A stretch of 64,000 bases of DNA from positions 1-64,000 of the forward strand of contig NIVC01003083.1 of the NCBI GenBank assembly GCA_002269645.1, in the 5' to 3' direction. Source of the stretch: Macrostomum lignano. Lineage: Eukaryota. The notes under the pieces were generated by a model. The model saw only the letters and a program-made list of their open reading frames with translations. It was not told the origin of the DNA and ran no database searches. Each line of letters starts with the position of its first letter. Positions within the stretch are counted from its first letter, which is position 1. Shown here piece after piece: positions 1,374 through 39,729 of this stretch. Position numbers and translations under genes: made by a program.

Positions 1374-1672
1374 ATCCATTGGCACTGGAGTTATCGCAGC
1401 TATTCTTAACAAAATAACTCAGGTTGAAAGAGATCTTGCAGAGTGGATCGCGAATAATATATATTTGCTACTTTTCCTCTGCAGTGCTTGAGGCTCTAGC
1501 TTAATCAGCTTTCCAGATATTCAATGGCGGAGATTCCGAAAAATTCTAATGTATTCAAATGGGGGAATTCGGGAAAATCAATCAGGAATTGCCAAGCTGT
1601 AGTAATAAACTCAGATTTGAGATTCTACAGATCATTAGAGCGTGCCAGTCGGTGTCTTCCGCAGAATGAAGG

Positions 1673-1914
1673 TTCTTGGGTCAGGATAGGAGATTCTTGG
1701 GTGAGGCTATTCTTGGGTCAGCATGGAAGATTCTTGGGTCAGGATAGGAGATTCTTGGGTGAGGCTATTCTTGGGTCAGCATGGAAGATTATTGGGTCAG
1801 GATAGGAGATTCTTGGGTGAGGCTATTCTTGGGTCAGCATGGAAGATTCTTGGGTCAGGATAGGAGATTCTTGGGTGAGGCTATTCTTGGGTCAGCATGG
1901 AAGATTCTTGGGTA
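1673..1914. repeat. 58-bp minisatellite (~4 copies) built from TTCTTGGGT subunits
   Basis: Unit ttcttgggtcaggataggagattcttgggtgaggctattcttgggtcagcatggaaga recurs at 1673, 1731, 1789 and 1847. Confidence 0.9.
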
Positions 1915-2844: not shown

Positions 2845-4337
2845 TTAAATAATCGACGAATTCAGCCGGAAATTCGGCTCCGAGTTCAGCTGCTGGTGAC
2901 CAGACAGTGTGGCGTCGAATTCGCCCTCGTAATCTTCGTCATCGTTATCCACTTTGACATCAAGATCGAGGTCGTCCTCGGATTTCGGATCGGCGGAGGC
3001 CTGCAGGTTAGGGGTGGCGACCGAGTTTTTGAAAGGCCATTTGAGGACAGGGAGATGATGATAAATGAGGTCATTCAAGGATGAGGAAATATATGCCATG
3101 AAAGGTCGATATTTAGGGACACGGACAGGGGTCATGTAGGACAAGACAAGGGGTTATTTAGGGACATGAGTATTGGTCATTTAAGGTCACAAACATCATG
3201 ACGGTATCACATGTTTAGTTGCACGCATATAAAGTGGTGAGTCATACATTAACATGGGTTGATAAAATTTCCCAGCTCACCGATCGATTATAGCCTAGCC
3301 GGGAGTCGGTCTCGCCGTCTCGACTATCGTCGTTGCCCCCAGCCAGCGATGCGGCTAAACAAGCGGCCACATCGAAGGCGGTTGTAGCGGCAGCAGCGTT
3401 AGCAGCAGTCCTACTACCCATAGTATTGCTGCCTAACACAGCAGCGCCGGTAGTATTCGCCAGTGGCAAATAAATTTTTCTAGCCACCACCGTCTGCTTC
3501 TGCTGCTGCTGCTGGCTGTCAGAGCCGGTCGCTCCCGATGCCGGGTATCGCCGACGGCCGGAACGGGCGCGCAGCTGCGGCTCCCCTGCACTCAGGCGTC
3601 TCTGCGCGAGAGATAAGAATAGGAAAGGGGTCAAATGAGGACAATAATTCTAAGCAGAGGTCATTTCAGGACAAAAATCAACCCTGGGGTCAGTTGAGGA
3701 CAAAAGTCTACCCAGGGGTCATTTGAGGACAGAATCTATCTGGAGGTCATTTGAGGACAAACTAATATACGTAAAGATCATTTGAGGGCAAACATCTACC
3801 GTGGGGTCATTGAAGACAGAGGTTATTTGGGGCAAAAAAATGCGCAGGGGTCAACTGTCCTTACCTGGCCAACAGTTGTGACGGCGGCGGCGGAGGCGGC
3901 GCACCACCCCGTCGGAACAAGGCGGCAGCGTCAGCGCCTTTGACAGTCGCCGATTGGCCCGCCTGGGTCGGCCGCCGAGATCGCCAAGACTGGGCGACAT
4001 GGACGACGCCTGCTCCGTCGAAGACTGCTGCGGCAGAGTTGTTGTTAAAGAGTCGGTGGCCATCGACGCGGCAGCGGCGACGGCGGCTGCGGCCGTGGCG
4101 TCGAGTAGAGGCTGGTCCAAGACAACGGCTGCCGACAGCTGCTGGCGAGAGCAGACGGCTCGACTCGAAGGCTCTGCTGGCAGGCGCGGCAACAGCGGCG
4201 CCGAATGATGAAGCGCAGTTTAGCCGAACGATCGCGCTCCGCAAGGACCTGCAATTGCAGCTGCATGCGAAGATTGGTCAGGTCCATCTGGAGGTCGTCC
4301 ACACGATGCAGGCGTTTCTCGTAGTGCTGCCGAATCT
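2845..4337 (-). CDS. 3' exons of an unidentified low-complexity / coiled-coil protein gene (exons ~4337-3865, 3601-3281, 3000-2845); first exon may be frameshifted
   Basis: GC-rich segments are bounded by cag| acceptors and gtaag/gtgag donors. The last two exons join in phase 0. The 4337-3865 exon cannot be read in one frame compatible with the next exon. No domain recognised. Confidence 0.4.
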
Positions 4338-4691
4338 CTGGGGGCGAAAGAAATGACAAGAGACTGTTAGGCGGCAAACAAGGACACAGGACTTCTAGAG
4401 GTTAAAGGACACAAAAGGTCTCTTAGAGGTCGAATGAGAACACAGAACTATAAGGGTAAAATGAGGACACAGGACTGTTAGGGGTCAAATGAGGACACGG
4501 GACTGTTGAGGGTCAATTGAGGACACGGAGCTGTTATGGGTCAAACTAGGACACGCGGGGACTGTTGTTGTGATAAGTTTTTGCATCATGTAGCAAACAG
4601 ACCATGGCACATTTGCACTAATGCACCATATCTAGACCAGCAGTATCTGAAATAGAAGCAAAAGCCATTTATAAGATAATATACATGTAGG

Positions 4692-4983
4692 TCAGTGAAG
4701 CAAATATCTAAAATTGTTAACAGAAGTATAAAAGAAAAATGAACAAGAAAAAATGGTGCTCAGTTAGCCGATTCTAAAAGTGAATCGTGGATCCCCTGAG
4801 CCACGAAGAGGCCGAACACCGTTCAGGGGGTTAATCCATAGTTCACTTTGCAGAGCAAAACAAATTCCACAGCACAGTAAACAGTGCACAGCGGTCTTTT
4901 GCAGCATTGAACTAAGGATCAATCCCGCCACTAAGAGCGGGAAGCCACAGCAAGAAATGCAAAGCGGCCAGCTTTTTGAAAGC
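4692..4983. repeat. ~291-bp direct repeat, copy 1 (copy 2 at 8672-8962)
   Basis: Near-identical from 'tcagtgaagcaaatatc' to 'ctttttgaaagc'. One G indel (ggggg vs gggg). Confidence 0.95.
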
Positions 4984-5051
4984 CGATAAAATCTTATAGC
5001 GAACTCCCCATGCAACGGGGGCTGATGGTTTCAGAGAATAAACTTAGCCTT

Positions 5052-7090
5052 TCAGTCTTTAAGCCACGGATGCAGTCGAAGCACATCCGAGCGCCTTTCT
5101 CCATAATCGTAGAGTAGCTCCTCGCCTCGAGCAATGTCTCGAATGGCTTGGAAGACCAGATGCGGTTTATTGTTTACATCAGCAACAATCGGCTTCAAGT
5201 TATTTCTTCGCCGGCTATGGTTAATGTACCGACCGACGTACTGGAAAGTGTTGGTTGCGTCGATGCAATAAGCTTGATCTCGCCAGGAAAAGAAAAACAA
5301 GAAGCAGCATGGCTTCCCTTGCTTTACAATATCTTCCTCCCGGGCGAGGCGTGCTTTTTGTCCTTGGATTAATTCTCCACCGTAAGTACAGACGACAGTG
5401 CCTTTTGGGAGGTCCGTACGGGCAAATGCCCCCAGACCCTCTGCGTCGACGCTACCGGCCTGAACCACGACGTTGCCGGTAGAAATCATTGTCTGTCGAA
5501 CCACATCGGCCATAGTGAGTTGCCTCATAGACGCCATTTCGGTCGGCAGGGATCGCTCTGGACTCCCACGGCTAGCTCGGCCGTGAGGCGTCACGTGAAG
5601 GAGCGGCGTGCATGCTCCGTCCGGAGTTGTGATAGTGTCCGGGACTAGACGCTCGCGATTAGCTGCCATTGCAGGAGGGGCAACCGCAGCAGCGTGGCTA
5701 TTTGAGTCCTCAGGCGAAGTCACAGTCGGCTCGAAAGGCGGATCATTGGACAGGCCATCTTTATTGGCTTCTCCTCTTTGGAGCCGAACGCTAAGGGGAA
5801 CCTGACAGTGAAGAAAATGAAGAGGACAAATGATTCATAGTGGTAACGGCATACAAATGCAGATTAACCCCAACGCTTTAATCTTTGCATTGAATAAACA
5901 TGCAACAAAATTGTTCCTAAGAACACTGTTTCACACAATAAACTGTGGACTTCATTTAGTTTGACCAACTTACTTCATTGGAGGTCGCCGGTACAGCGTC
6001 GGTAGATAAGGCGACGTCTATAGTTGCAGCAGCGGCAGACTCCGGGACCAGAAGCTCGCGATTAGCTGCCATTGCAGGAGGGGCAACCGCAGCAGCGTGG
6101 CTATTTGAGTCCTCAGGCGAAGTCACAGTCGGCTCGAAAGGCGGATCATTGGACAGGCCATCTTTATTGGCTTCTCCTCTTTGGAGCCGAACGCTAAGGG
6201 GAACCTGACAGTGAAGAAAAAAGTACATCATAATGGTTACAACATGCAATTAAAGATGAACGTAACCCTTTGTTATTTTCATTAAACATACATGCAACCC
6301 AGCTGATGGTAAGATAATTGCTCTACACCATAAACCATGGGCCAGCATAAAAGACCCCACCCCTTGTTGTTAATCCCTAATATTTCCTTTTGAGCAAAGT
6401 ATCTAAAAGCTTTTATTTATTCATTTTTCACTTTCATCTTCTCAAATTTACCAAACATTCAACTTTTTAAGAAAAGTTGCGACCTGACCTGACCCGCGAC
6501 CTGATGCTTTCAAGGTTACAGGCCGCAGCGTTTTAACAACAAAAAACCATGGACACAAATTTTAGTTTAACACACCTCATTGGAGGTCGCCATTTCAGCG
6601 TCGGTAGCTAAGTCCGCGTCCATTGTTATAGCGGCGGCAGATTCCGGCAGGCTTTCAAGCGGCAAGGCTGGATTAAGATTTAGTTGAGGCCGGATGCCGT
6701 AAAAGGCCAACAACCGCAGGCCCTCAATTCTGTCATATGCCCTTGCCCTCGCATCAGCTACGGCTGCACGGCCGACAACAAATGCTTCGCCGAAATGGCA
6801 CAGCCGCATGTGTTGTCTCATATTAGAGGCGGCAAATGAGCTGCACAGCTGGCAAAGCTTTAAATCTCTTTTGCCATGCCAACGTTTGTAGAGAATGTAG
6901 GCTTCGACTCGATCGTAGTTTGCTGTATGCTTGCTTCGAGCGTGTCGAAGGAGGGTGGCGGACCGATTGGTGGAATAGTCACACATCGGGCAAATAAACT
7001 GGTCAGGGTCCATATTGAATTGATTCAAGTTTTCAACGTAAACGTTTAGAGTAAAATTTAGTTCTCGATAAAACGTGTCGCGCAAACTTT
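5052..7090 (-). CDS. Spliced C2H2 zinc-finger + SET-domain protein, KMT5A/SETD8/PR-Set7-like (exons 7090-6576, 6204-5974, 5801-5052; ~470 aa from Met 7013, an upstream exon is possible)
   Basis: Both introns are phase 0 with canonical sites (GAG|gtgtgt, tcag|GTT, GAA|gtaagt). N-terminal fingers: CPMC-x12-H-x4-H and CQLC..QHMRLCH. The C-terminal SET domain has GLGAFA, TYGGELI, YCIDAT, GRYINHS and GEELLYDYGERR..HPWLK, matching the SETD8 C-terminus (ELLYDYG.R......HPWLK). Confidence 0.88.
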
Positions 7091-7375
7091 CTGAAAATGA
7101 GGAAAAATCAAAATGAAACCTTTAACTACGGTGAAAGATGAATGAACTAGGCATCTTGGTAATAGGTACTTTACAATGCACTCTTAAAGACTGTCAGACT
7201 GAAAGCAAAGAAGGCATGTTCCGCTCGCTCGTAGTCTCAGGACAATAATAAAAGGCAGCTGAACAGATCAAATCAAATGTTTATTTGAAAGGTTGGGCGA
7301 TACAACGGACTTGATAACGCATTACAGTCCCGAATTTCTGCATAGTAGCATTAGGTTGCCAGTCACACTGAAGTT

Positions 7376-7993
7376 TTAAAGCAAATCGAGTAGTGAAACG
7401 GAATTCGAAATTGTAGGATTTGCATTTTGTTGCAACGAAACGCTGGGAGAAGCTGGATTAAAAAAGCCATTGAAATCATTGTCTAACGTAGTTACACTAC
7501 AACTGTGGCAGGGGCATGTACAATGGCTATCAGGGCAATTGAAAATGTTTGAACGTAAAACACTTGGACCGGAGAGCTGTGAATCGGCACACTTTTCGGA
7601 GGGGTTCCTGGCGGCTAGTGATTGCAGCTTAGAAATTAAAACTTCAGCGTTTTCTTTAGCCTCGTCTAAGTTATAGGTAGATTGCGAATTTCCATTTGTC
7701 TTAGATTGCTTTCCATGTTTTACCCTAACATGGCTTGGTAAATTCGAAGTGATAACACTGCAAACAGGACACTGATAGAGGTAACCCGATTCGGTTCGCT
7801 TCTTTGCCTTTAAAAGTCCAAAAAGGCGGATTGTGGCATCAATTTGCTCTTCAGTGGCATCAGGGTGCTTTCGATTGCAATGTACCTTGAAACCAGATGC
7901 GCGTCCTGTCCAAGCATTGCAGATCAAACAGGAAATCTGCGTATGAACCTGCACCATGTGAGACATTGTCCCGCGGGTGACATTCAAGAGCAT
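7376..7993 (-). CDS. Double C2H2-type zinc-finger protein (205 aa), same finger-pair layout as the N-terminus of the SET gene
   Basis: CLICNAWTGRASGFKVHCNRKH and CPVCSVITSNLPSHVRVKH, followed by a Ser-rich tail with CPDSHCTCPCHSC. Confidence 0.7.
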   Translation of the reverse strand: MLLNVTRGTMSHMVQVHTQISCLICNAWTGRASGFKVHCNRKHPDATEEQIDATIRLFGLLKAKKRTESGYLYQCPVCSVITSNLPSHVRVKHGKQSKTNGNSQSTYNLDEAKENAEVLISKLQSLAARNPSEKCADSQLSGPSVLRSNIFNCPDSHCTCPCHSCSVTTLDNDFNGFFNPASPSVSLQQNANPTISNSVSLLDLL

Positions 7994-8671
7994 CGGGAAA
8001 ACGTTGTGGGCTTATTATTATACTGCTTCCAGGGAGGTTAGGCAAATTAAGTCTTAATTTTTGTATTCTAAGACAATGACGGAGAGGAAATGCTTTAGAG
8101 TATAAAAAATTCTGAATCTCACATCTGAATCTCCTATCCTCTGATCGGAACCAGGTCTATCTTCCAACATGAACATCCTTTCCTCTCAACTGAAACCCTC
8201 GAGTCCGAGTCAATAAGGCTACAGGCCAAGCAGGGTGCCATTAGTTAGTGTGGGCAGTTACATTTTCAATCTCCCCAGCCAAGCCTAAAGTGCTGCTATA
8301 AATGGGATAATGAGTGCATGGCGGGATGGGTCACTGCTATTGCTTATGGTTAACACGTAACAAAAGTAAAAGACAAAAATGTGTATATCACGATTACTAG
8401 TTCCACTTTTATTATACTTTCGCGCTATCTTTGAAGCAGTATGCAAATATACTATTGGCATAGCGGGCGTCTAAACGCAGGCTAACATAAGAGAACTGAC
8501 AAATTGCAGTGAGTGTCAAAGTGTAGTACAACGAAAAGGGACAAAAGTAAGACGCATATGCGCCTCTCGCTGCAACGACAGGCGACTGCATATAAATGCA
8601 TGAAATATTAAGTAATACAAACGAGAGAATAAAACACATTCAAGAAAGTTGCTCGTAGTTATAAATTTCAA

Positions 8672-8962
8672 TCAGTGAAGCAAATATCTAAAATTGTTAA
8701 CAGAAGTATAAAAGAAAAATGAACAAGAAAAAATGGTGCTCAGTTAGCCGATTCTAAAAGTGAATCGTGGATCCCCTGAGCCACGAAGAGGCCGAACACC
8801 GTTCAGGGGTTAATCCATAGTTCACTTTGCAGAGCAAAACAAATTCCACAGCACAGTAAACAGTGCACAGCGGTCTTTTGCAGCATTGAACTAAGGATCA
8901 ATCCCGCCACTAAGAGCGGGAAGCCACAGCAAGAAATGCAAAGCGGCCAGCTTTTTGAAAGC
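8672..8962. repeat. ~291-bp direct repeat, copy 2
   Basis: Matches 4692-4983. On the minus strand this copy begins just after a tttcag acceptor-like site. Confidence 0.95.
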
Positions 8963-9125
8963 TGAAATACTGCTTACTTTGGTAGGCTGTAAACTTTACA
9001 GTAAATTTCTAAGAGAAATCGGTATACGTTTATAAACTGGTTTAGAATTTCATGTAAACAAGCTAGTTTACATCCGAAATATGATTATCCTATGGATAAC
9101 AGTTTCAAGTAATCGAGTTTCGGAA

Positions 9126-11916
9126 TTAAATACTATCAATCCATTCTTCATCTGACTCAGACTGCTCACGACTTGATTCAACGTCTGAATGACTCGGGGC
9201 TTCAACGTCATCTGGCTGATTTACGTTGGTACCAGCGTCGTTTGGATGCTGCGCATCAGCAGCAGCAGCTTCAATGCTTGCGTCAATGTGATCAAAGCGA
9301 AGAGCTTGAAGTTGCTTTAAAATAGTCTGAAAGAGGCATCGAAACTGGGCTGGCAATCCAGGTTGATGATGGAGTGTTTCACAGTGCTGTTCAAGTTTAA
9401 TTTGAACGTCACGCCACTCTTGCACAATAATGATCTTTTCCTCCGCTAGACGATTCAGCTTGTGATACAAGTCAACCACCCGTCGCTTGAACCTCTCAGA
9501 CACATCGATCGAAAGACCGAAGTAGAAGTCTGACTGGAAGTCGCGAAGCTGAATCATAGTGGGCACGCGAAGGCCTGGCGGAAGCGAGCGGGCGGCCATT
9601 CGAATGTCTGCATTTAAAGCCGCAACCTTGCGTAGACATGCTCGATTTTCTTTTTGTCCATCTGAGCAGCCACTCTGACGGATCCAATAGAATCGTTCCA
9701 AAGCAAGTGCCTTAAGCTTTGCGTAAGGTTCCCTGCTCAATGGAGAGTCGCTATTGGGATTTATGGCTTCTGCATGCCATTGTTGAGCAAGATTTAAAAT
9801 GGCTACCTCAGAGATTCCGGCAGGAATAGTTAATTTGTTGTTCCGCATCAAATCGCCAGCTTGTAGAAGCAATTGCTCCATTTCAGCTGAACAAGACGCG
9901 GCTGTGCGAGTTATTAGTTTTAATCGAGCAGAAAACCAATTGGAGGCGTACAACAACTGATTAGCATTGAAGCAATGCAAAATGTAAGACATACAAGCAC
10001 TTCTGCGATCGGACCGCATGTACTTTAAGCTTTTACCAAACGGTCGTAGTGCAGACCAAGCGCGCTCCGTATTCTCCCCGTCGCAAAGACCCGCTCCAGG
10101 AGTTACCCGCACGGAGTACTTTAGTTGGCATTGTCTCTCGTGGCCCAGCACATGAAAGGCGTTCACAGCGCACGTGACACTGTTAAGCTGTACACCAGAT
10201 GCTGACACCATGGACTTGACACGATTGGAAATGCGACAACCTGATTTTAGGAAAAAGTTTTTAAATGAATAAATAATTGAGCTTCGTGTCGCAGTACGCA
10301 TGCACGTACATAAGTAAGCACAAGCATAAGTAAGCACACACTATAAGTGTATAGTGTAAATAAGTGCAGCATGATAGAAACACGATAAAAATCAACTCAC
10401 CAACATCATAGATAAAAATGAGATCCTTTGAGACGGGCTGTGTCATTAGGTAATGACGAAGAGTCTGTTCTGGATAGCACAGGCCCTCACCAGCTGTAAT
10501 AATGTTGCAACCTGTCAGAAGCCTGTTATGCCGGCAAAATAAGCCAAAGAAACCGTTGACATCGTGCTTGCTGGCCCTGATCACGGGTTTTTCTGTTCCA
10601 GCCTTCCAGTTAGTGCAGCCTTCTGCAGACACTTGTGTCGTAGGAGGCGGTACAGTTGCTGGTTCTACATGAATAAGCGGTGACGGCAATGAGCGTTCAG
10701 AATCTGGCACTAGACGTTGCTTCGAACCCATACTTTGTAGTCTTCGCCATCCAAATAGAGCATCAGCACAAACTACAGACTTCCGACTTGAATTTTGGTC
10801 AGGACACAAAAGACAACTAGCAGGCCAGCTTGCTGAACACCTCTGCAACTCTCGAAACCGCAGTAGGACTCCATTACGCTGCAATCTCTGATACACTCGA
10901 TCGGCTAAACCAGGGTTCCAGCGACCTTGTCCTACGACGGAGCCTTTGAAAAGACAGGTAATTGCACGAGACAGTGGCAGTTGACCGTCAAAGCACAAGG
11001 AGTCAAGAGTTGATAGAAAGCTAATTGAAAAAAATGTTAACAATTCGCCAACGCGTGACTCGCTTCCAGGAAAGTATCCTTTTGCTAGCATGGCATCAAC
11101 TTTATCACAGGATTGGCACGTATAAATTCTGGCGCAAACAATTCCGTTGATGTCAATAATCTGAATTTCGGATGATGTTGTATACTCAGAAGACAAGCTT
11201 GATTCGCTACAGCAGAATAGAGAGACAGGCTCTTCTTCTTGAATGTCTTCAAACATTAGCGATTGAGCCTAGGAAAAAGGGTTAAATTTTGTATGCGGTG
11301 TTATAAAAATATTATTCCGTACTAAGGCTATTAGCATTCTAAATACTTTTGTTTCACGTCAAATTTAATACAGCGTTATACTGCCAAATAGGCGTCATTG
11401 TTTTCTTCACAGTAAACTAATATCCTTAGAAATTGCAATTTAGATTTTAAAACAACTTACATTCCACTGGAGGAACTTGTGAGCAGCAAAATTTCCATGC
11501 GTTATCTTTTTACAATCACTGCAGACATCGTACTGACAATGAACGCATCGGAAAACTCCAGGCTGCATGTCGCAACGAACACAGCATTTTAACTCGAATG
11601 ACTGTTTATAACCGGCAGTGTAACTTTCCACAATGGCCGTGTAGTCTTCCCATTCCGTGAATTTAGGCGGCTGTTCAAACTTATTACTAATCTGTTCAGG
11701 CATAGAGTCATGGTTTCCTGCACCCAGATCTTGTGAAAGACTGCCGCCAGTGACTGTGGAACACGAGGAAGCCGTGGCAATCGATGTAGTACTTTCCAAT
11801 GCATTAGGCGCATTAGACGTTCGCAATATCCTTGGCCTTCCGCGTTGGCCAGTCATCAGTACTACTTCAGATTGTCTTTTTCTCGATTTCGCATTTAGTT
11901 TTCTTGACGAAATCAT
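9126..11916 (-). CDS. KDZ (Kyakuja-Dileera-Zisupton) family transposase with N-terminal Cys clusters; 3 exons 11916-11461, 11268-10401, 10240-9126 (~810 aa)
   Basis: Splicing (AAT|gtaagt..ctag|GCT phase 0; GTTG|gtgagt..tcag|GT phase 1) gives one open frame. It contains C..C...C..C....C..C...H...H.F..W, GYFPGS (CxC-type), CADALF, GLFCRH, GEGLCYP, a splice-reconstituted YDVGC, AFHVLGHERQCQLKYS and GAGLCDGENTERAWS, which are hallmark KDZ motifs. Confidence 0.9.
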
Positions 11917-14756
11917 TGCTGAAATTCGTGAGGATCATTCTGAATTGTATATTACATCATATGCTAAGCTCAAAAGGTGTTTATCTATATCAGTGTCTTT
12001 TTAGAGCAGGTGCTTAGCCATCTGCTCAGCCACCTGCAAGGCAACCTGCTCAGGCATTGCAGCTCAGGCAGTGGCTGGCTTGGAGCATCAGCTGATTTGA
12101 TTAAAGTTGATTAAAATCTAGCAGATTTATAGTCTATAATTTGTTATCCATAGCCATATTGCATTGAGTTGTGTTTATAAGTATATAATAAGCAGCTTAA
12201 ATTATTATTTGGTGTAATTGGGATGCTTTGGAATATGTTTTCTAAATTTTCCACTTCATCTTGTATTCTTGATTGTTGTATTTTCTTACAAGTCTTTTCT
12301 GGGTCCTTATGTCTATGAAAAAGGGTAGGCCTACCTGCATATAGTGGCTCTTTGATTTTAATTTATAAATTTTAGATGTATACATTTTTTGTTTTAATAG
12401 TTGCAGTTTAATGAGCCACAACACAAATGCCCACAAAGTTTTTATCAGTTTTATTTTATTTGGAATATTCCAATAAATTATAATATATAAATATATATTA
12501 TTTATCTAACAAAAAGAATTCTATATGAATATTATATTTACATATTTATAGTCACAGAATCATGCACTGAAAAAGTTCTTCTTAGGCTTGATAACAATAT
12601 AGAAACATATAGAAACTAATAGATAAAAGTCTTAAATAACATTTATCATTTTTGATATTCTGTTTTTTAATTTGACTAAGAACATCTAAAGAAATCATAC
12701 TTTTTTATTAGAATATTTAAACTTATTTAAAGGCAACAAAGGTACAAAAGAATAGGCAGCCTTATGGTCATAACATTATGGTTTTAACTTTTTTCTGTCA
12801 ATTCACTAACTTTGAATTACCAATAGATTAAAAATTTAATAGATTATATGGCCATTAATGTTTATATCTAATTATGCAAATACTATAATTTTATCTATAG
12901 TTTGTTTCAATCTTCCAAAGCTTTTTATTTGTTTTCAAAAGGTACACAAAGTTAATGATGTCTTTTGCTTAAAAAAATGTCCAATTTTTTATAAAAATAG
13001 CTTTTTGCCAACTGATATTATACTAATCCAACATTTTACCATTCATTTTTGGCATTTGTTATTTGTCCAATGACTGGACAAATAGCCTTTTTGCTATTTG
13101 TCTGCTTAAATTGCTAACACAAGTATCTGTTTGTTTTATGATGAATATTCTAAATTTTTAAGACCTTTTCTTGTATATTAATTAATATTTTCTTATATAC
13201 TGTTAGCAAAGCAATGTATTCAATTTGGCATAATTTTGTATATAAGACACACTAGTATAACAACATAATAAACTAATAATCAAGATACAAATAAGAAGTC
13301 TTTAAAGTCTAGGAATATTTATCCTTGTAGTTTCTATGAAATAGATTTTTTAGCATTATTAATTTAATTGGACAAATAACAAAATGTCTATTTGTCCAGT
13401 ATTAACTAGATGAATAAGAAAGCATGGTCATAATCCAGTAACTGGACAAATAACAATTGCTTTTATTTTTAGATTGTATGCTAGTATAGGCTTATATTAT
13501 ACATAAAGAACATTTGGCAGAAAAATTAGCTAGCAAGGCAATGGTGAGCAAAATATTGACTTTTTACTATTTTCCAAATATGTCTATCTTATCTGGCTGG
13601 AATGAGCCACCTGACATAGGCCCTACTCACTATATATTCCACTCTTGACTCCAAGGTGCATATAGGAAAAAGATTATTTAAGTGTAAGGTGTGCGATGAA
13701 AAATACAAAGTGGGACTGTAGCCTAAGAGCAATGCTGTTACCTAGCTATTTAAGAAGTAGTACTTCAACCAACCTGCTGTCTAGCAACAAATGAGATCTA
13801 CTGTCACTGACATATGACAAGCATATCTAAGATGCTTGAAGTTTAAAAAAATTCTTAATACTCTGGTCACAGTTGCTGTGTCACTGTCACAGATTCATCA
13901 GTTAATTCATCACAAATAAGCCCTCAAATCTCTAGAAGGTATTCATTTGAAGTAGCCAGGATCACCATATTATTTTTTGTTATTGGCCCTTGCTCTATGC
14001 ACTGCCTACAAACTTGAAGGTCTATATTATATTATTACACAATCTAAATATACTAAATCTCTAAGGTTTGTTTGTATGCTTGAATGAATGTCCATAATGC
14101 TCTAGTTGTATAACTAAATTCATGCAAATATATATCTAGATTTGAAAGGCCTTCTCGTCTCAATTTCAGCACAAAAAGTGCCAGGAATCAGGTCGACAGG
14201 TCATTCGCAAGTCAGTTTCATCACATACTACTATTGTATCAATATTTACACAAACTACACGTCACAATTTACACAATGATGTATGACAAAAAATTACATA
14301 TATTACAAACTACACGTCACAATTTACACAAATATTTACACAATAATTAATATATTACAAAAAAGCTATGCGATTAGCGAATACGTGGCTACACACACAT
14401 CAGCCATAGCTTTTATGATAGCTAGAAGAAAAAATTATTGCCGATGTAACGCATCAGCTATGGTAAACAAAGAAACACTAGGAGAACTAATGACGCAGCG
14501 CGAGAAAAATCTGTTTTAGATTTGCGGCTGTTAGTTTGTTCACATAAGATAGGCATATTAAGTGTTTTAGTAAAATAAAATGCAAATACAATAAATAAAC
14601 GTATTTTTTTCTCCTAAAACAGAACCCACCGATCGCATCAGTTTTTTTTATCAATAAATTATTACATTTGTTATACTACAGATAAATTTCCGGTGGTCTA
14701 AGCCAAGTGTAATAACTAGCGCAACGATCCCTAAATCATCGCTTGTGACGCTTGGA

Positions 14757-17700
14757 ACCCCAAATCAACTCAAGAAGGCCCAAACCAGCCCTAGGAAGCT
14801 CAAACTAGCCCTGGAAAGCTCAAACTAGCGCTGGAAAGCTCAAATTGGCGCGGGAAAGCTCGAATTGGCGCCGGAAGCAAAATTTGGCGCCAGGATCCCC
14901 AAATTGGCGCCAGGAACCCCAAATCAACTCAAGAAGGCCCAAACCAGCCCTAGGAAGCTCAAACTAGCCCTTGAAAGCTCAAACTAGCCCTGGAAAGCTC
15001 AAACTAGCGCTGGAAAGCTCAAATTGGCGCGGGAAAGCTCGAATTGGCGCCGGAAGCTAAATTTGGCGCCAGGATCCCCAAATTGGCGCCAGGAACCCCA
15101 AATCAACTCAAGAAGGCCCAAACCAGCCCTAGGAAGCTCAAACTAGCCCTGGAAAGCTCAAACTAGCGCTGGAAAGCTCAAATTGGCGCGGGAAAGCTCG
15201 AATTGGCGCCGGAAGCTAAATTTGGCGTCAGGATCCCCAAATTGGCGCCAGGAACCCCAAATCAACTCAAGAAGGCCCAAACCAGCCCTAGGAAGCTCAA
15301 ACTAGCCCTGGAAAGCTCAAACTAGCGCTGGAAAGCTCAAATTGGCGCGGGAAAGCTCGAATTGGCGCCGGAAGCTAAATTTGGCGCCAGGATCCCCAAA
15401 TTGGCGCCAGGAACCCCAAATCAACTCAAGAAGGCCCAAACCAGCCCTAGGAAGCTCAAACTAGCCCTGGAAAGCTCAAACTAGCGCTGGAAAGCTCAAA
15501 TTGGCGCGGGAAAGCTCGAATTGGCGCCGGAAGCTAAATTTGGCGCCAGGATCCCCAAATTGGCACCAGGAACCCCAAATCAACTCAAGAAGGCCCAAAC
15601 CAGCCCTAGGAAGCTCAAACTAGCCCTGGAAAGCTCAAACTAGCGCTGGAAAGCTCAAATTGGCGCGGGAAAGCTCGAATTGGCGCCGGAAGCTAAATTT
15701 GGCGCCAGGAACCCCAAATCAACTCAAGAAGGCCCAAACCAGCCCTAGGAAGCTCAAACTAGCCCTGGAAAGCTCAAACTAGCGCTGGAAAGCTCAAATT
15801 GGCGCGGGAAAGCTCGAATTGGCGCCGGAAGCTAAATTTGGCGCCAGGATCCCCAAATTGGCGCCAGGAACCCCAAATCAACTCAAGAAGGCCCAAACCA
15901 GCCCTAGGAAGCTCAAACTAGCCCTGGAAAGCTCAAACTAGCGCTGGAAAGCTCAAATTGGCGCGGGAAAGCTCGAATTGGCGCCGGAAGCTAAATTTGG
16001 CGCCAGGATCTCCAAATTGGCGCCAGGAACCCCAAATCAACTCAAGAAGGCCCAAACCAGCCCTAGGAAGCTCAAACTAGCCCTGGAAAGCTCAAACTAG
16101 CGCTGGAAAGCTCAAATTGGCGCGGGAAAGCTCGAATTGGCGCCGGAAGCTAAATTTGGCGCCAGGATCCCCAAATTGGCGCCAGGAACCCCAAATCAAC
16201 TCAAGAAGGCCCAAACCAGCCCTAGGAAGCTCAAACTAGCCCTGGAAAGCTCAAACTAGCGCTGGAAAGCTCAAATTGGCGCGGGAAAGCTCGAATTGGC
16301 GCCGGAAGCTAAATTTGGCGCCAGGAACCCCAAATCAACTCAAGAAGGCCCAAACCAGCCCTAGGAAGCTCAAACTAGCCCTGGAAAGCTCAAACTAGCG
16401 CTGGAAAGCTCAAATTGGCGCGGGAAAGCTCGAATTGGCGCCGGAAGCTAAATTTGGCGCCAGGATCCCCAAATTGGCGCCAGGAACCCCAAATCAACTC
16501 AAGAAGGCCCAAACCAGCCCTAGGAAGCTCAAACTAGCCCTGGAAAGCTCAAACTAGCGCTGGAAAGCTCAAATTGGCGCGGGAAAGCTCGAATTGGCGC
16601 CGGAAGCTAAATTTGGCGCCAGGATCCCCAAATTGGCGCCAGGAACCCCAAATCAACTCAAGAAGGCCCAAACCAGCCCTAGGAAGCTCAAACTAGCCCT
16701 TGAAAGCTCAAACTAGCCCTGGAAAGCTCAAACTAGCGCTGGAAAGCTCAAATTGGCGCGGGAAAGCTCGAATTGGCGCCGGAAGCTAAATTTGGCGCCA
16801 GGATCCCCAAATTGGCGCCAGGAACCCCAAATCAACTCAAGAAGGCCCAAACCAGCCCTAGGAAGCTCAAACTAGCCCTGGAAAGCTCAAACTAGCGCTG
16901 GAAAGCTCAAATTGGCGCGGGAAAGCTCGAATTGGCGCCGGAAGCTAAATTTGGCGCCAGGAACCCCAAATCAACTCAAGAAGGCCCAAACCAGCCCTAG
17001 GAAGCTCAAACTAGCCCTGGAAAGCTCAAACTAGCGCTGGAAAGCTCAAATTGGCGCGGGAAAGCTCGAATTGGCGCCGGAAGCTAAATTTGGCGCCAGG
17101 ATCCCCAAATTGGCGCCAGGAACCCCAAATCAACTCAAGAAGGCCCAAACCAGCCCTAGGAAGCTCAAACTAGCCCTGGAAAGCTCAAACTAGCGCTGGA
17201 AAGCTCAAATTGGCGCGGGAAAGCTCGAATTGGCGCCGGAAGCTAAATTTGGCGCCAGGATCCCCAAATTGGCGCCAGGAACCCCAAATCAACTCAAGAA
17301 GGCCCAAACCAGCCCTAGGAAGCTCAAACTAGCCCTTGAAAGCTCAAACTAGCCCTGGAAAGCTCAAACTAGCGCTGGAAAGCTCAAATTGGCGCGGGAA
17401 AGCTCGAATTGGCGCCGGAAGCTAAATTTGGCGCCAGGATCCCCAAATTGGCGCCAGGAACCCCAAATCAACTCAAGAAGGCCCAAACCAGCCCTAGGAA
17501 GCTCAAACTAGCCCTGGAAAGCTCAAACTAGCGCTGGAAAGCTCAAATTGGCGCGGGAAAGCTCGAATTGGCGCCGGAAGCTAAATTTGGCGCCAGGATC
17601 CCCAAATTGGCGCCAGGAACCCCAAATCAACTCAAGAAGGCCCAAACCAGCCCTAGGAAGCTCAAACTAGCCCTGGAAAGCTCAAACTAGCGCTGGAAAG

Positions 17701-18095
17701 CTCAAATTGGCGCGGGAAAGCTCGAATTGGCGCCGGAAGCTAAATTTGGCGCCAGGATCCCCAAATTGGCGCCAGGAACCCCAAATCAACTCAAGAAGGC
17801 CCAAACCAGCCCTAGGAAGCTCAAACTAGCCCTGGAAAGCTCAAACTAGCGCTGGAAAGCTCAAATTGGCGCGGGAAAGCTCGAATTGGCGCCGGAAGCT
17901 AAATTTGGCGCCAGGATCCCCAAATTGGCGCCAGGAACCCCAAATCAACTCAAGAAGGCCCAAACCAGCCCTAGGAAGCTCAAACTAGCCCTGGAAAGCT
18001 CAAACTAGCGCTGGAAAGCTCAAATTGGCGCGGGAAAGCTCGAATTGGCGCCGGAAGCTAAATTTGGCGCCAGGATCCCCAAATTGGCGCCAGGA
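14757..18095. repeat. 159-bp higher-order satellite (~21 copies) made of eight ~20-bp subrepeats; 139- and 179-bp variants
   Basis: Period 15091->15250 = 159. The 15581->15720 unit is 139 (one subrepeat missing). Some units carry an extra cttgaaagctcaaactagcc. Confidence 0.97.
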
Positions 18096-19481
18096 TCGCC
18101 GAATCAGCGCTGGAATTTGCCAACGGGCGTAGAAGTGGCAGCATATATCAGCTTGCTACTTTTTGGCGCCGATTTTAATATACCGGCGCCAATTTCAGCC
18201 TTTGGGCGCCCATTTTAGCGCCCTGGCAAGGTCAATGCATTTAGTTCTCACGCGATGGCGCCAAAAAATTTTTTTTTTTTTTTGAATTAGTGCCATGTAT
18301 CTTGCCAACCAATACGAGTCAAGTTCTGGCGTCTGCTTTTCCACAGCCGCCTGGCTGGGTCCCGTCAACAAGCTATTTTTAGCGTGGGAAACTGTCTGAC
18401 TCACTCATTTGATTCCCCGAGTCCACGGGTGCAAGGGCTAGCCAAGGTGGACCCACGGTGGAGCCACCTGGCTAGCCACGTATTTTTTGTGTAGTGGATT
18501 GTCTGGCTAGCCTGGGAATATGCTCTGGAGAATATACGCCCCGCCCCTCAATCCTCTCCCCTCTTTGTGGACATTCTGTCTGCACAGGTGTACAGCCTTA
18601 TTCCCTCGGACTTACAGTCTGATCCTCCCCCAAGCATCCCCGCTCCCGACCCTTCCTCGTAGAAATTTCCCACATTCATTAGGCAGATTGCCTTCTTATC
18701 TAATGCTGTCAGCATTCCCTATTAGTATTTAGAAGTTCCCCATTAGTGTGCTTTCCCAGGCAACTCTGATCCATCGCGAAGCCCTTAATTCCCCTCTCCC
18801 ATCTTTATTCCCTCGGACTAGTTAAGTTAATATAGATTGTGTCTTGCCGCTCGGACACTCACGCCACCAGGAGCAACCATTGGCTTACTCCTATTAGTAA
18901 TAAAACTAGCATATCTATCAGAAATCCCCAAGAATCCCATAACTTACCCTACAACAAATTTGGTTGCAGCAGTGAGATTATTAAACAGAGAGACAGAACC
19001 CTACAACAATTTGGTGTCAGCAATAGGAAAACTTCCCTCCCCCAAGACCCCTGTAACAAATTTGGTAACAGCGGTGGGATTTTCTTAATAATAAACAGCC
19101 CTATAACATGTGAAAAAAATAGGTATGCTGGTGTCCTATATTTAATTTTCCGTAAAATTCAATATTTTTTTTAAATTGTAAATTCTTACGAGCGTATTAT
19201 ATTTTACACCATTTTCTATGTTAAAATCTTGAATTAGCACAACTGTATTTTTTGCAGTGCTGCCAAAAACTACACAAGTGAGCTCGCCTTCAGGACATTT
19301 CCTGTCCAACTGTAATCTGCTCATTAAAAAGTTCCTAAGAAATCAAATAGAAATACCGGACTTACCCTAAAATCATGGATTTGTTGTAATTAAATTTATC
19401 AGATTCAACCAGCTAGGTAATAAAATTAGCATGCAAAAATATGGTTTCTATCTCAAAAATATCTGGTGAAATCTATGTAAT

Positions 19482-39375: not shown

Positions 39376-39406
<31 letters not shown>

Positions 39407-39427
39407 TATATAGATAGACAGACAGGC

Positions 39428-39464
<37 letters not shown>

Positions 39465-39695
39465 GCAGGCAGGCAGACAGGCAGACAGACAGACAATAAG
39501 ACAGACACTAATACACTTGGCAGCAGATGACAGAGACAGTCAGCAGCCACTGCTGCAAGAGCTAGTGCAAGGAGACACTAAGACATGCAGTTGCTAAACT
39601 ATCCTTTCAGAGCTGGTGGAGTTTTGCCCGAATCTCAGCAACAACCACAGCAGGGACGTCAGAAGCAACAGCAGCAGCAACAGCAGCAACAACAG

Positions 39696-39729
<34 letters not shown>

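What the first reader, a model, noticed from the sequence alone, without database searches (positions are those of the whole stretch)
4600..12100. Intact KDZ transposase co-oriented with a zinc-finger-fused PR-Set7/KMT5A-like histone methyltransferase: candidate transposon-borne chromatin-writing system
Seen: a spliced, stop-free ~810-aa KDZ transposase is followed on the same strand by a double-C2H2 ORF and a spliced C2H2-ZnF-SET gene. The transposase has candidate catalytic D (CADALF), D (YDVGC, formed only after splicing) and E (DGENTER). The three genes are tightly packed and share an internal 291-bp repeat. Established: fungal KDZ elements are associated with TET/JBP DNA-modifying genes, and SETD8/PR-Set7 writes H4K20me1. 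Inference: an animal KDZ element carrying its own sequence-targeted H4K20 methyltransferase, used for anti-silencing, self-marking or target-site chromatin preparation. I do not know of this exact combination, but cannot exclude that it has been described.
Basis: partly seen in the sequence, partly recalled or inferred. Interest (0 to 1): 0.9.

Follow-up and report, generated by a model that had tools for sequence, protein, structure and literature searches.

The report
Flatworm KDZ transposase with SET-domain partner genes
In the flatworm Macrostomum lignano an intact KDZ-type transposase gene is kept together with two zinc-finger genes, one fused to a histone H4K20-type methyltransferase domain, which looks like a mobile-element module with its own chromatin-modifying enzyme, although I could not show that it actually moves.

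Summary
All genes lie on the minus strand of a Macrostomum lignano contig (NIVC01000910.1).

- **KDZ gene:** three exons, 812 aa, with an intact KDZ domain.
- **Finger-only ORF:** 205 aa with a paired zinc finger.
- **ZnF-SET gene:** spliced, encoding a paired zinc finger fused to a SET domain. The SET domain is closest to KMT5A/SET8 in both sequence and predicted fold.

The adjacency is not chance. A second M. lignano family has the same three genes, at 47%, 35-40% and 31% protein identity to the window's. It also has a homologous upstream array of 20-bp repeats and the same habit of repeating the KDZ 3' tail behind the cargo genes. The window family sits on at least 9 contigs. The five copies compared differ by only 0.02-0.5% substitutions.

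The SET protein is not a canonical PR-Set7, because it has zinc fingers at its N-terminus, is multi-copy and always sits next to a KDZ gene.

Transposition is not shown. The copies share long flanks and no 3' end or target-site duplication was found. There is only one sharp 5' breakpoint with unrelated flanks. H4K20 activity and any targeting are inferred.

Cargo of this general kind is already known: TET/JBP genes in fungal KDZ elements and SET genes in oomycete Harbinger and MuDR elements. I rate this a new variant of a known kind, of moderately high interest.

The parts
18107..18527 (-). Outermost 5' segment of the repeated unit. In KDZ orientation it begins CAGAGCATATTCCCAGGCTAGCC... and contains scattered GGCGCC motifs. 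It is a candidate 5' terminus.
   Evidence: Homology between the window and copy L008 starts exactly at window position 18527, and the sequences upstream of that point are unrelated. Neither flank has a long ORF (none was scanned for domains). No inverted copy of this segment was found downstream.
14754..18106 (-). Tandem array of about 21 higher-order units of 159 bp, built from 20-bp subunits close to GGCGCCAATTTGAGCTTTCC. All subunits lie in the KDZ orientation.
   Evidence: TRF found the array. The 20-mer has 63 matches in the 64-kb window, all inside this array and all on the minus strand, against 0.01 expected. The array aligns at 76-78% identity over about 3.3 kb with the array upstream of the diverged L001 family, in the same orientation and at a similar distance from the KDZ start codon. 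Array length varies between copies: 1.4 kb in L008 and at least 6.8 kb in L009.
11917..14753 (-). AT-rich spacer (about 29% GC between 12 and 14 kb) between the array and the KDZ start. It contains MITE-like inverted repeats at 13052-13460.
   Evidence: Composition is and the inverted repeats I1 and I2. The spacer is not conserved between the two families. Copy L008 has a 3.3-kb insertion with an ACTAG duplication at 13251-13256. Copy L010 diverges at 13873 into sequence that encodes a PHD+MULE transposase.
11461..11916 (-). KDZ transposase exon 1. It encodes the N-terminus with an RGRPR motif and a B-box-like cysteine cluster.
   Evidence: B-box hits are weak (E about 0.003). An AG lies 2 nt upstream of the ATG.
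10401..11268 (-). KDZ transposase exon 2. It encodes a CxC-like cluster and the first half of the KDZ domain, including D321 and D388, and ends in YDVG.
9126..10240 (-). KDZ transposase exon 3. It encodes the second half of the KDZ domain (H471, H475, D495, E497, E500) and a helical, acidic C-terminus.
   Evidence: The intron at YDVG|C is at the same position in the L001 family.
8660..8965 (-). Repeat R, copy 1, starting about 160 bp downstream of the KDZ stop codon.
   Evidence: It is 99.7% identical to copy 2. It has no Rfam or tRNA match.
7376..7993 (-). Finger-only gene ('ZnF2', 205 aa) encoding a paired zinc-finger module without a catalytic domain. An AATAAA lies about 90 bp after the stop.
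   Evidence: The ORF is. It matches the profile of the ZnF-SET N-terminal module at E=5e-7. Its 31%-identical homologue lies at L001 11951-12823. The CDS is 100% identical in L008, L009, L010 and L013. It is not annotated in GenBank.
6576..7013 (-). ZnF-SET exon A, encoding the paired zinc-finger module (C2H2 plus C2HC) and the start of the linker.
   Evidence: Pfam zf-H2C2_5 scores 27.3 bits against a cut-off of 27. The annotated mRNA begins at about 7088, just after a tttcag acceptor.
5974..6204 (-). ZnF-SET exon B, a recently duplicated, optional linker exon of 77 aa.
   Evidence: It is included in P0196 and P0197 and skipped in P0001.
5052..5801 (-). ZnF-SET exon C, encoding the rest of the linker and the KMT5A/SET8-like SET domain, ending in HPWLKD.
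   Evidence: Pfam SET matches at 3e-20. PDB KMT5A matches at 2e-26 with the Y245, NHS, Y334 and Y336 equivalents kept. The AF2 model has block-mean pLDDT of 80-97 here, and its top 18 fold hits are all SET8, of which 16 have TM 0.78-0.87 (target-normalised).
4680..4986 (-). Repeat R, copy 2, starting about 66 bp downstream of the SET stop codon.
   Evidence: The L001 family has the same arrangement with an unrelated 553-bp repeat that includes the last 46 nt of its KDZ CDS and an AATAAA.
2848..3421 (-). Downstream 98-aa gene (P0195) that carries the same transcriptional-unit name prefix in other copies. Whether it belongs to the module is doubtful.
   Evidence: It has no counterpart in the L001 family and no Pfam domain.

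Best explanation
**What it is.** This is one copy of a Macrostomum-lineage KDZ (Kyakuja-Dileera-Zisupton superfamily) transposon-type module. In order, the module has:
1. a several-kb array of 20-bp repeats;
2. a gene for a KDZ transposase that looks catalytically intact;
3. two accessory genes that share one paired zinc-finger module. One encodes the fingers alone. The other fuses them to a KMT5A/SET8-type lysine methyltransferase domain.

**Shown.**
- The gene structures.
- The domain identities.
- Conservation of the catalytic residues.
- Conservation of the whole trio plus a homologous upstream array in a second, strongly diverged family.
- Multiple near-identical copies.

**Inferred, step by step.**
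1. The genes are transcribed as one unit and separated by trans-splicing. Reuse of the KDZ 3' tail (repeat R) gives the cargo gene its 3' end.
2. The zinc-finger module tethers both accessory proteins to DNA. The most obvious candidate site is the element's own 20-bp array or its ends.
3. The SET domain then mono-methylates H4K20, or another lysine, locally.
4. This mark benefits the element in one of two ways. It could shape the element's chromatin state. It could also help repair the double-strand breaks made by cut-and-paste transposition, because H4K20 methylation is a docking mark for 53BP1. SETMAR is the comparable case of a SET domain paired with a transposase.

This would be the histone-level counterpart of the TET/JBP cargo of fungal KDZ elements.
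For: **Identity of the parts.**
- KDZ matches Pfam at 4e-34 and has invariant D, D and E residues.
- The SET domain is KMT5A-like in sequence and fold, with catalytic residues kept.
- The finger-only proteins match the ZnF-SET N-terminal profile at 1e-14 and 5e-7.

**Conserved linkage.**
- The L001 family has KDZ (47% identity, same intron position), ZnF-SET (35-40%) and the finger-only gene (31%) on one strand.
- The upstream arrays of the two families are homologous at 76-78% over 3.3 kb. They lie in the same orientation, 2.7-2.8 kb from the start codon.
- Both families repeat the KDZ 3' tail behind cargo genes, although the tails are unrelated in sequence.
- A third KDZ lineage without cargo also has a 3.5-kb array of 20-bp units upstream.

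**Copy number and age.**
- The window family is on at least 9 contigs and the L001 family on at least 5.
- The five window-family copies compared differ by 0.02-0.5% substitutions. The three M. lignano subgenomes differ by 1.4-2.4% (PMC10733133).
- Related proteins span a range of divergence: 100% identical copies, a 78% identical paralogue fragment (P0002) and 35-40% identical homologues.
- Copies differ structurally: a different 5' flank at a sharp breakpoint, array length, a 3.3-kb insertion and a MULE-containing flank.

**Co-transcription.**
- KDZ, ZnF-SET and the next gene share one 'Mlig' prefix with consecutive gene numbers.
- In that annotation, the prefix marks a cluster of transcriptional units that were cut into genes at trans-splice and poly(A) sites (PMC5730564).

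**Precedents.** Fungal KDZ elements carry TET/JBP genes, and SET genes occur in Phytophthora HarbingerS and MuDR elements (PMC12730594).
Against: - No terminal inverted repeats, target-site duplication or 3' terminus were found.
- Four further window-family copies are collinear with the window from the array, through the genes, into a downstream satellite of about 600-bp units. One of them continues beyond that satellite. Large segmental or homeologous duplication can therefore explain most copies.
- The assembly is known to be redundant: 180-312 Mb is duplicated (PMC5730564).
- The GenBank gene set excluded transcripts that overlap annotated repeats, yet these genes were kept. This argues against a high-copy element.
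- The single 5' breakpoint could be a duplication breakpoint.
- No KDZ-SET pair was found outside M. lignano. There was none among 61 KDZ loci from metagenomes. The one metagenomic ZnF-SET gene for which neighbouring genes could be read sits beside an OTU-domain protein, not a KDZ.
- The cargo-less KDZ lineage also has an array. The array may therefore serve the transposase rather than the zinc-finger proteins.
- The substrate and any DNA binding are untested.
Confidence: 0.55

Rival explanations
1. This is a domesticated, immobile gene cluster. An ancient KDZ insertion and two zinc-finger genes became a host gene cluster. That cluster duplicated once long ago, giving the two families. It was then multiplied by the recent polyploidy, segmental duplication and haplotype redundancy of the M. 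lignano DV1 assembly. On this view the KDZ protein and the SET enzyme now serve a host function, for example at satellite or heterochromatin arrays.
For: - The copies share more than 20 kb of flanking sequence, including satellites on both sides.
- No TIR or TSD was found.
- The genes have introns at conserved positions.
- The ZnF2 and ZnF-SET ORFs are open in all five copies checked. The KDZ ORF is open in three of them.
- The genes survived the repeat filter of the GenBank annotation, and the assembly is known to be redundant (PMC5730564).
Against: - At least 9 contigs carry the window family, where three subgenomes are expected. Their substitution divergence of 0.02-0.5% is well below the 1.4-2.4% between subgenomes (PMC10733133).
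- A sharp 5' breakpoint has unrelated flanks in two copies.
- The unit is embedded in repeat-rich sequence, and other TEs have inserted into individual copies.
- Related proteins show graded divergence (100%, 78% and 35-40% identity), which is typical of TE families.
- The transposase catalytic residues are intact, although domesticated transposases can keep them.
Confidence: 0.35
2. The adjacency is chance. A host zinc-finger SET gene, or the true PR-Set7 orthologue, simply lies next to a KDZ insertion, and the whole region was then copied by polyploidy.
For: All window-family copies compared share the same flanks, so within this one family the adjacency could have arisen once.
Against: - An independent family, diverged to 47% identity in KDZ, has the same three genes in the same orientation, with a homologous upstream array and the same 3'-tail reuse.
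- The SET protein has a non-canonical N-terminal paired zinc finger that it shares with the third gene of the module.
- The genes share a transcriptional-unit name prefix.
Confidence: 0.03
3. The module is real, but the SET enzyme acts on a non-histone substrate, such as the transposase itself or a repair or replication factor. Alternatively, the zinc-finger module mediates protein-protein contacts rather than DNA contacts.
For: - KMT5A is known to methylate non-histone proteins as well (established knowledge).
- The zinc-finger module is atypical. Only finger 1 reaches a Pfam C2H2 threshold, and only barely, and finger 2 is of the C2HC type.
- The cargo-less KDZ lineage also has a 20-bp array. 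The array therefore need not be the zinc-finger target.
Against: - The fold and the C-terminal HPWLK helix match the SET8 complexes with the H4 peptide and with the nucleosome closely, at TM 0.81-0.87.
- The catalytic and Phe/Tyr-switch tyrosines are those of a mono-methylase.

Nothing tested here separates histone from non-histone substrates.
Confidence: 0.07

Closest known systems
Fungal KDZ (Kyakuja/Dileera/Zisupton) DNA transposons carrying TET/JBP dioxygenase genes (Iyer et al. 2014; Kojima 2025, PMC12730594)
   Same: - The transposase belongs to the same superfamily (Pfam KDZ, conserved D/D/E, upstream cysteine clusters).
- A chromatin or epigenetic-mark enzyme is encoded next to the transposase and co-inherited with it.
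- The candidate 5' end begins with CA, as reported for Kyakuja termini.
   Different: - The cargo is a histone-type lysine methyltransferase fused to zinc fingers, plus a finger-only paralogue. It is not a DNA-base dioxygenase.
- The host is an animal (a flatworm).
- The module has a multi-kb array of 20-bp repeats upstream.
- Complete ends and the 7-8 bp TSDs that define the fungal elements were not found here.
- The closest fungal KDZ is only 26% identical.
KMT5A / PR-Set7 / SET8, the H4K20 mono-methyltransferase
   Same: - It is the best sequence match (2e-26) and the best fold match. All top 18 fold hits are SET8 and 16 of them have TM 0.78-0.87.
- The match includes the N-flanking helix, the NHS motif, the ELLYDYG motif with both tyrosines, and the C-terminal HPWLK.
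   Different: - Identity is about 30-45% depending on the measure: 31-34% in the structural alignment, and 40-46% in the library search for most of the best hits outside the module.
- It has an N-terminal paired zinc finger in place of the disordered PIP-box region.
- It is multi-copy and always sits beside a KDZ gene.
- It does not group with the two named canonical KMT5A proteins (a coral and a snail) in a rough NJ tree, which is unresolved.
- Activity is untested.
SET-domain genes inside HarbingerS and MuDR transposons of Phytophthora (Kojima & Jurka 2014, as cited in PMC12730594)
   Same: A DNA transposon lineage carries a SET histone methyltransferase gene as cargo.
   Different: The transposase superfamily and the host kingdom are different. 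I could not examine those sequences, so the SET subfamily and any zinc-finger fusion there are unknown to me.
SETMAR (Metnase), a primate SET and mariner transposase fusion
   Same: A SET methyltransferase is functionally paired with a DNA transposase. It has a proposed link to double-strand-break repair and to binding of transposon ends.
   Different: SETMAR is a single-copy host gene in which a host SET gene captured a transposase. Here the genes are separate, the transposase looks intact, and the SET subfamily differs (KMT5A-like rather than the SETMAR type, which matches at only 3.8e-5).
Two-gene DNA transposons with a separate DNA-binding partner protein (PIF/Harbinger Myb-like protein), and VANDAL elements with the VANC anti-silencing factor
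   Same: The element encodes accessory, probably DNA-binding, proteins beside the transposase. The role could be recruitment to the ends or control of the element's own chromatin.
   Different: The protein families are unrelated. No binding data exist for the module here.

Membership tests
KDZ transposase superfamily (Pfam PF18758) | KDZ catalytic domain above Pfam's gathering score | tested here: met
   118.7 bits against a cut-off of 26.6, E=4e-34, covering profile positions 4-212 of 217 on the spliced protein.
KDZ transposase superfamily (Pfam PF18758) | Conserved acidic residues (D, D, E) and the His/Cys motif of the RNase H-like core | tested here: met
   D321, D388, D440, H471, H475, C479, D495, E497 and E500 are invariant across three M. 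lignano lineages and two fungal KDZs.
KDZ transposase superfamily (Pfam PF18758) | N-terminal CxC-type cysteine cluster associated with KDZ | tested here: inconclusive
   CxC1 scores 15.5-17.4 bits and is below threshold (cut-off 26.9) in both cargo-bearing families. CxC1 and CxC2 are also below threshold in the third lineage.
KDZ DNA transposon (complete element) | Defined termini with 7-8 bp target-site duplications, and copies in unrelated genomic contexts | tested here: inconclusive
   There is one sharp 5' breakpoint with unrelated flanks (window 18527 against L008), and the sequence starts with CA. The 3' end was not reached: the copies stay collinear downstream to the end of the held sequence. 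No TIR was found. The tools cannot search the M. lignano genome by DNA.
KMT5A / PR-Set7 / SET8 | SET domain whose closest relatives in sequence and fold are KMT5A | tested here: met
   PDB phmmer gives KMT5A at 2e-26 and the next family at 9e-13. All top 18 Foldseek hits are SET8, best rmsd 2.4 A; 16 of them have TM 0.78-0.87 (target-normalised).
KMT5A / PR-Set7 / SET8 | Catalytic residues: Y245 equivalent, NHS motif, and Y334/Y336 in ELLYDYG | tested here: met
   The alignment to 5teg and 4ij8 gives VCTYGGELI, YINHS and EELLYDYG. These columns are invariant or nearly so in a 40-sequence alignment.
KMT5A / PR-Set7 / SET8 | Canonical orthologue: single-copy host gene with a disordered N-terminus and no zinc fingers | tested here: not met
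   It has an N-terminal paired zinc finger. It is on at least 9 contigs, always beside a KDZ gene. The host's canonical KMT5A could not be identified with the tools.
KMT5A / PR-Set7 / SET8 | Mono-methylation of histone H4 lysine 20 | not testable with these tools
   This needs an enzyme assay.
Transposons carrying chromatin-modifier cargo (KDZ+TET/JBP, HarbingerS/MuDR+SET) | The modifier gene is co-inherited with the transposase across diverged element families | tested here: met
   Two families, at 47%, 35-40% and 31% identity for the three proteins, have the same orientation, homologous upstream arrays and the same 3'-tail reuse.
Transposons carrying chromatin-modifier cargo (KDZ+TET/JBP, HarbingerS/MuDR+SET) | The modifier gene lies between the element's two termini | tested here: inconclusive
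   The 3' terminus is unknown.
C2H2 zinc-finger DNA-binding proteins | Recognisable C2H2 fingers, and DNA binding | tested here: inconclusive
   Finger 1 matches zf-H2C2_5 at 27.3 bits against a cut-off of 27. Finger 2 is C-x2-C...H-x4-C and has no Pfam hit. The AF2 block-mean pLDDT is 70-87 for finger 1 and 56-61 for finger 2. Binding was not tested.

The most novel reading that the evidence does not exclude
This would be a self-contained, transposon-encoded chromatin-targeting system in an animal. The element's paired zinc-finger proteins would read its own multi-kb array of 20-bp repeats. The SET fusion would write H4K20me1 there, and the finger-only paralogue would act as competitor or co-factor. 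The element would thereby set its own chromatin state, or recruit 53BP1-type repair to its excision and insertion sites. This would be the histone-mark equivalent of the TET/JBP cargo of fungal KDZ elements, arising in a lineage thought to lack DNA methylation.
Probability: 0.2. Interest if true: 0.85.

Novelty: new variant of a known kind. Interest (0 to 1): 0.66.

Why it matters
Transposons that carry enzymes acting on epigenetic marks are rare, and they show how mobile DNA and host silencing interact. The known cases are DNA-base dioxygenases in fungal elements and SET genes in oomycete elements.

An animal KDZ module with a KMT5A-type methyltransferase fused to a DNA-binding-like module would extend this idea in two ways: to histone H4K20 methylation and to metazoans. 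The module also has a finger-only paralogue and a large array of short repeats that is conserved between families.

M. lignano is a tractable model with transgenesis and RNAi. The proposed functions could therefore be tested directly: chromatin self-marking, anti-silencing or repair assistance.

If the cluster instead proves to be domesticated, it would be a new example of a transposase and a chromatin writer co-opted together, possibly at satellite DNA.

Tried and rejected
- **Exact look-up of the 205-aa ORF.** Nothing was on record. The ORF is unannotated.
- **TIR search.** I searched for an inverted copy of the 5' terminal 428 bp in all held sequence. There was none.
- **3' end search.** I looked in L008, L009, L010, L013 and the 4.9 kb beyond the window start. 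All are collinear, and the contigs end in satellite.
- **L010 divergence at 13873.** I considered this as the element end and rejected it. The homologous array lies further out, and the L010 flank holds a MULE transposase.
- **Repeat R as an RNA gene or SINE.** There is no Rfam or tRNA hit. The two families' R sequences are unrelated.
- **KDZ-SET pairs elsewhere.** The first metagenome scan found nothing. The second gave 61 KDZ loci with no SET or zinc-finger neighbour.
- **Other ZnF-SET-like proteins.** P0054 lies beside an OTU-domain protein with no KDZ. P0006 lies on a gene-dense contig that looks like a giant virus.
- **Viral contigs.** These gave only SET-only relatives at 33-34% identity, so they give no support for a viral origin.
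- **SET-domain NJ tree.** It is unresolved, with all distances between 0.57 and 0.69. I did not use it for classification.
- **20-mer comparison.** The unit of the third KDZ lineage is not significantly similar to the one here.
- **Downstream 98-aa gene as a fourth module gene.** It is not conserved in the L001 family.
- **dN/dS.** I did not compute it. The copies are too similar, and the families are too diverged (dS saturated).

Full report
**1. What is in the sequence**

Everything in the finding lies on the minus strand.

- **KDZ gene.** It has three exons (11916-11461, 11268-10401 and 10240-9126) with GT-AG introns. They give an 812-aa protein with no stops. My translation is identical, residue for residue, to P0190, a GenBank-derived protein annotated on four other contigs of the same assembly. 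This confirms the splice model independently.
- **KDZ domain.** The spliced protein matches Pfam KDZ at E=4e-34 over almost the whole profile. They are D321 in CADALF, D440 in YDVGC (which spans the second intron) and E497/E500 in DGENTER.
- **Finger-only ORF.** Downstream lies a 205-aa ORF (7993-7376) with two zinc-finger-like motifs.
- **ZnF-SET gene.** Next comes a spliced gene with exon A at 7013-6576, optional exon B at 6204-5974 and exon C at 5801-5052. It encodes an N-terminal paired zinc finger, a low-complexity linker and a C-terminal SET domain. Both isoforms are annotated in GenBank.
- **The repeats.**
  - The 292-bp repeat is real (99.7% identity). Its two copies lie just 3' of the KDZ stop and just 3' of the SET stop, not in all three genes.
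  - A second, 180-bp repeat is a tandem exon duplication within the SET gene.

**2. Organism and identity of the proteins**

The window comes from Macrostomum lignano, contig NIVC01000910.1 of assembly GCA_002269645.1. The ZnF-SET protein is PAA74960.1.

- **Sequence.** The best matches among solved structures are all human KMT5A/SETD8 (about 2e-26, against 9e-13 for the next family). The Y245 equivalent, the NHS motif, ELLYDYG and the C-terminal HPWLK are all kept.
- **Fold.** An AlphaFold model built on a 40-sequence alignment has block-mean pLDDT of 80-97 across the SET part. All of its top 18 PDB fold matches are SET8. 16 of them have target-normalised TM-scores of 0.78-0.87, and the best rmsd is 2.4 A.
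- **Conclusion.** The 'PR-Set7-like' label is justified for the domain. The protein is not a canonical PR-Set7, because it has zinc fingers at its N-terminus, is multi-copy and is always next to a KDZ gene.

**3. The adjacency is conserved, not accidental**

An exhaustive HMMER search found a second M. lignano protein, P0005. It is about 40% identical and has the same zinc-finger-plus-SET architecture. Its loci (L001-L003) have a KDZ gene directly upstream on the same strand. That KDZ is 47% identical to the window's and has an intron at the same YDVG|C position.

Those loci also contain a 290-aa finger-only ORF that is 31% identical to the window's 205-aa ORF. The order of the two accessory genes is swapped between the families.

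The finger-only proteins match a profile of the ZnF-SET N-terminal module at E=1e-14 and 5e-7. The module therefore encodes two paralogous finger proteins, one with and one without the enzyme.

Three genes co-diverging in linkage rules out chance adjacency.

**4. Two further shared architectural features**

*Reuse of the KDZ 3' tail.* In both families the KDZ 3' tail is repeated behind cargo genes.
- In L001, a 553-bp segment is repeated at 100% identity about 66 bp after the SET stop, and partly again after the finger-only gene. The segment includes the last 46 nt of the KDZ CDS and an AATAAA.
- In the window, the 292-bp repeat also starts about 66 bp after the SET stop.
- The two families' repeats are unrelated in sequence. 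The arrangement, not the sequence, is what is conserved.

*Upstream array of 20-bp repeats.*
- The window has a 3.4-kb array (14754-18106) of 159-bp higher-order units built from 20-mers close to GGCGCCAATTTGAGCTTTCC. All subunits are in the KDZ orientation. The motif occurs nowhere else in the 64 kb (63 matches against 0.01 expected).
- The L001 family has a 4-kb array of 158-bp units in the same orientation and at a similar distance (2.7-2.8 kb) from the start codon. The two arrays align at 76-78% identity over 3.3 kb. The best-conserved coding DNA stretches of the two families align at only 69-71%.
- A third M. lignano KDZ lineage (P0183, 33% identical) has no SET or finger gene within 10 kb. 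It still has its own 3.5-kb array of unrelated 20-bp units immediately upstream.
- The array therefore looks like an integral part of these KDZ units. It may be a binding array for the transposase or for the finger proteins. I could not test that.

**5. Is it a transposon?**

*For recent amplification.*
- Database clusters show the window-family KDZ on at least 9 contigs. ZnF-SET genes have adjacent accession numbers on those contigs. The L001 family is on at least 5 contigs.
- The five window-family copies compared differ by only 0.02-0.5% substitutions. The three M. lignano subgenomes differ by 1.4-2.4% (PMC10733133). There are thus more copies than ploidy predicts, and they are younger than the subgenome split.
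- The copies differ structurally:
  - array length varies (1.4, 3.4 and more than 6.8 kb);
  - L008 has a 3.3-kb insertion with an ACTAG duplication;
  - L010 has a MULE-bearing flank;
  - there is a sharp breakpoint at window 18527, beyond which the window and L008 are unrelated.
- The sequence at that breakpoint begins with CA, as reported for Kyakuja termini (PMC12730594).

*Against.*
- On the 3' side, every copy I could fetch stays collinear with the window through a satellite of about 600-bp units and beyond it.
- I found no inverted terminal repeat and no TSD.
- The assembly is known to be highly redundant (PMC5730564).
- These genes passed the repeat filter used for the GenBank annotation.
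- The tools cannot search the M. lignano genome by DNA.

Mobility therefore remains unproven. I give the 'mobile or recently mobile KDZ module' reading 0.55 and a domesticated, duplicated cluster 0.35.

**6. Transcription**

In the M. lignano annotation, genes were cut from 'transcriptional units' at trans-splice and poly(A) sites. Units clustered at 95% identity share a name prefix (PMC5730564).

KDZ, ZnF-SET and the next downstream gene share a prefix with consecutive gene numbers. One number is skipped exactly where the unannotated finger-only ORF lies, for example g2, g4, g5 and g25, g27, g28.

AG acceptors sit just upstream of the KDZ ATG and at the annotated 5' end of the ZnF-SET mRNA.

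This suggests one polycistronic unit. It is an inference from naming and sequence, not from RNA data.

**7. Mechanism**

*Shown.*
- An intact-looking transposase.
- A KMT5A-type catalytic domain with mono-methylase-type residues.
- Two proteins that share one paired-finger module.
- A conserved array.

*Inferred.* The fingers tether the proteins to DNA, possibly at the array or at the element ends. The SET domain then deposits H4K20me1 locally. This either sets the element's chromatin state or aids repair of transposition breaks. Both ideas draw on established knowledge: H4K20 methylation recruits 53BP1, and SETMAR is the known pairing of a SET domain with a transposase. A non-histone substrate, or protein-binding fingers, cannot be excluded.

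**8. Comparison with what is known**

- The literature search found no report of a KDZ element with a SET gene.
- The general idea is established. Fungal KDZ elements carry TET/JBP genes, and SET genes are reported in Phytophthora HarbingerS and MuDR transposons (PMC12730594).
- Outside M. lignano I found ZnF-SET-like proteins without KDZ context. One is a likely orthologue from an unidentified sequencing run (P0010, on a 1.7-kb contig). The others are weaker matches from metagenomes.
- None of the 61 KDZ loci from metagenomes has a SET neighbour.

**9. Verdict**

- **Observation:** confirmed, with corrections to the repeat description.
- **Interpretation:** partly supported. The module is real, conserved and unusual. 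Its mobility, substrate and targeting are open.
- **Novelty:** a new variant of a known kind.

Noticed in passing
L006 6436-9910 (NIVC01001515.1), upstream of KDZ gene P0183: A third, cargo-less M. lignano KDZ lineage (33% identical, with more introns, on a single contig) has its own 3.5-kb array of 20-bp units (CTAGCTACACCCTGCTCTCC). The array ends about 110 bp before the gene. The unit is not similar to the 20-mer in the window.
   Followed up: partly
window 5638-5817 and 6041-6220: A 403-bp tandem duplication of a linker exon plus its intron (99% identical) lies inside the ZnF-SET gene. It gives two annotated isoforms that differ by 77 aa. The end of exon A (6569-6647) is also 80% similar to the end of the duplicated exon.
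   Followed up: yes
L008 5329-8660, inserted at window 13251-13256: One copy of the unit has an extra 3.3-kb insertion flanked by a 5-bp ACTAG duplication. It has no long ORF and no clear terminal repeats. I did not identify the element type.
   Followed up: partly
L010 1971-3709 (NIVC01003192.1): A PHD-finger plus MULE transposase (MuDR-type element) lies upstream of one copy of the unit. That copy loses homology to the window at window position 13873.
   Followed up: partly
window 13052-13460: Nested inverted repeats resembling a MITE (arms of 27 and 45 nt, 82-89% complementary) lie in the AT-rich spacer upstream of KDZ.
   Followed up: no
window 3647-3792 and 4368-4534: Two short arrays, five copies each of related 28-29-bp units (core GGGGTCA..TGAGGACA), lie downstream of the second R copy. 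Their role is unknown.
   Followed up: no
window 1-1913 and about 4.5 kb beyond the window start (L005): The downstream flank is a satellite of about 575-600-bp units containing (GAATA)n, plus a 58-bp repeat at 1668-1913. Contigs that carry other copies of the unit end inside it.
   Followed up: partly
window 22222-24420, minus strand: An ordinary host gene fragment with a PAN/Apple domain and a fibrinogen C-terminal domain lies about 3.7 kb beyond the 5' breakpoint of the unit.
   Followed up: partly
window 29061-31547, minus strand: A long ORF (828 aa) encodes reverse transcriptase and RNase H domains and is probably from a non-LTR retrotransposon.
   Followed up: partly
window 58378-61022, plus strand: Fragments of a retrotransposon pol gene (reverse transcriptase and integrase core) are broken into several ORFs.
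   Followed up: partly
window 38917-43420, plus strand: Exons of a protein kinase with a CNH domain (MAP4K-like host gene) include a very long poly-glutamine tract at about 39585-40163.
   Followed up: partly
L075 (Logan SRR33465455 contig, 51 kb): The SET-only protein P0006 is 46% identical to the window's SET domain. It lies on a gene-dense, intron-free contig with Erv1/Alr and HARE-HTH genes, which looks like a giant-virus genome.
   Followed up: no
L011 1180-7232 (ENA metagenome contig): An intron-less C2H2-plus-SET protein (P0054) follows a 1129-aa protein with an OTU protease domain on the same strand. The organism is unknown and there is no KDZ.
   Followed up: partly
proteins P0003 and P0004: A 4152-aa seadragon protein (Phyllopteryx taeniolatus) and a 799-aa sea cucumber protein (Holothuria leucospilota) match the query's KMT5A-like SET domain in 5 and 8 separate stretches, so they may carry several SET domains or fragments in tandem.
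   Followed up: no
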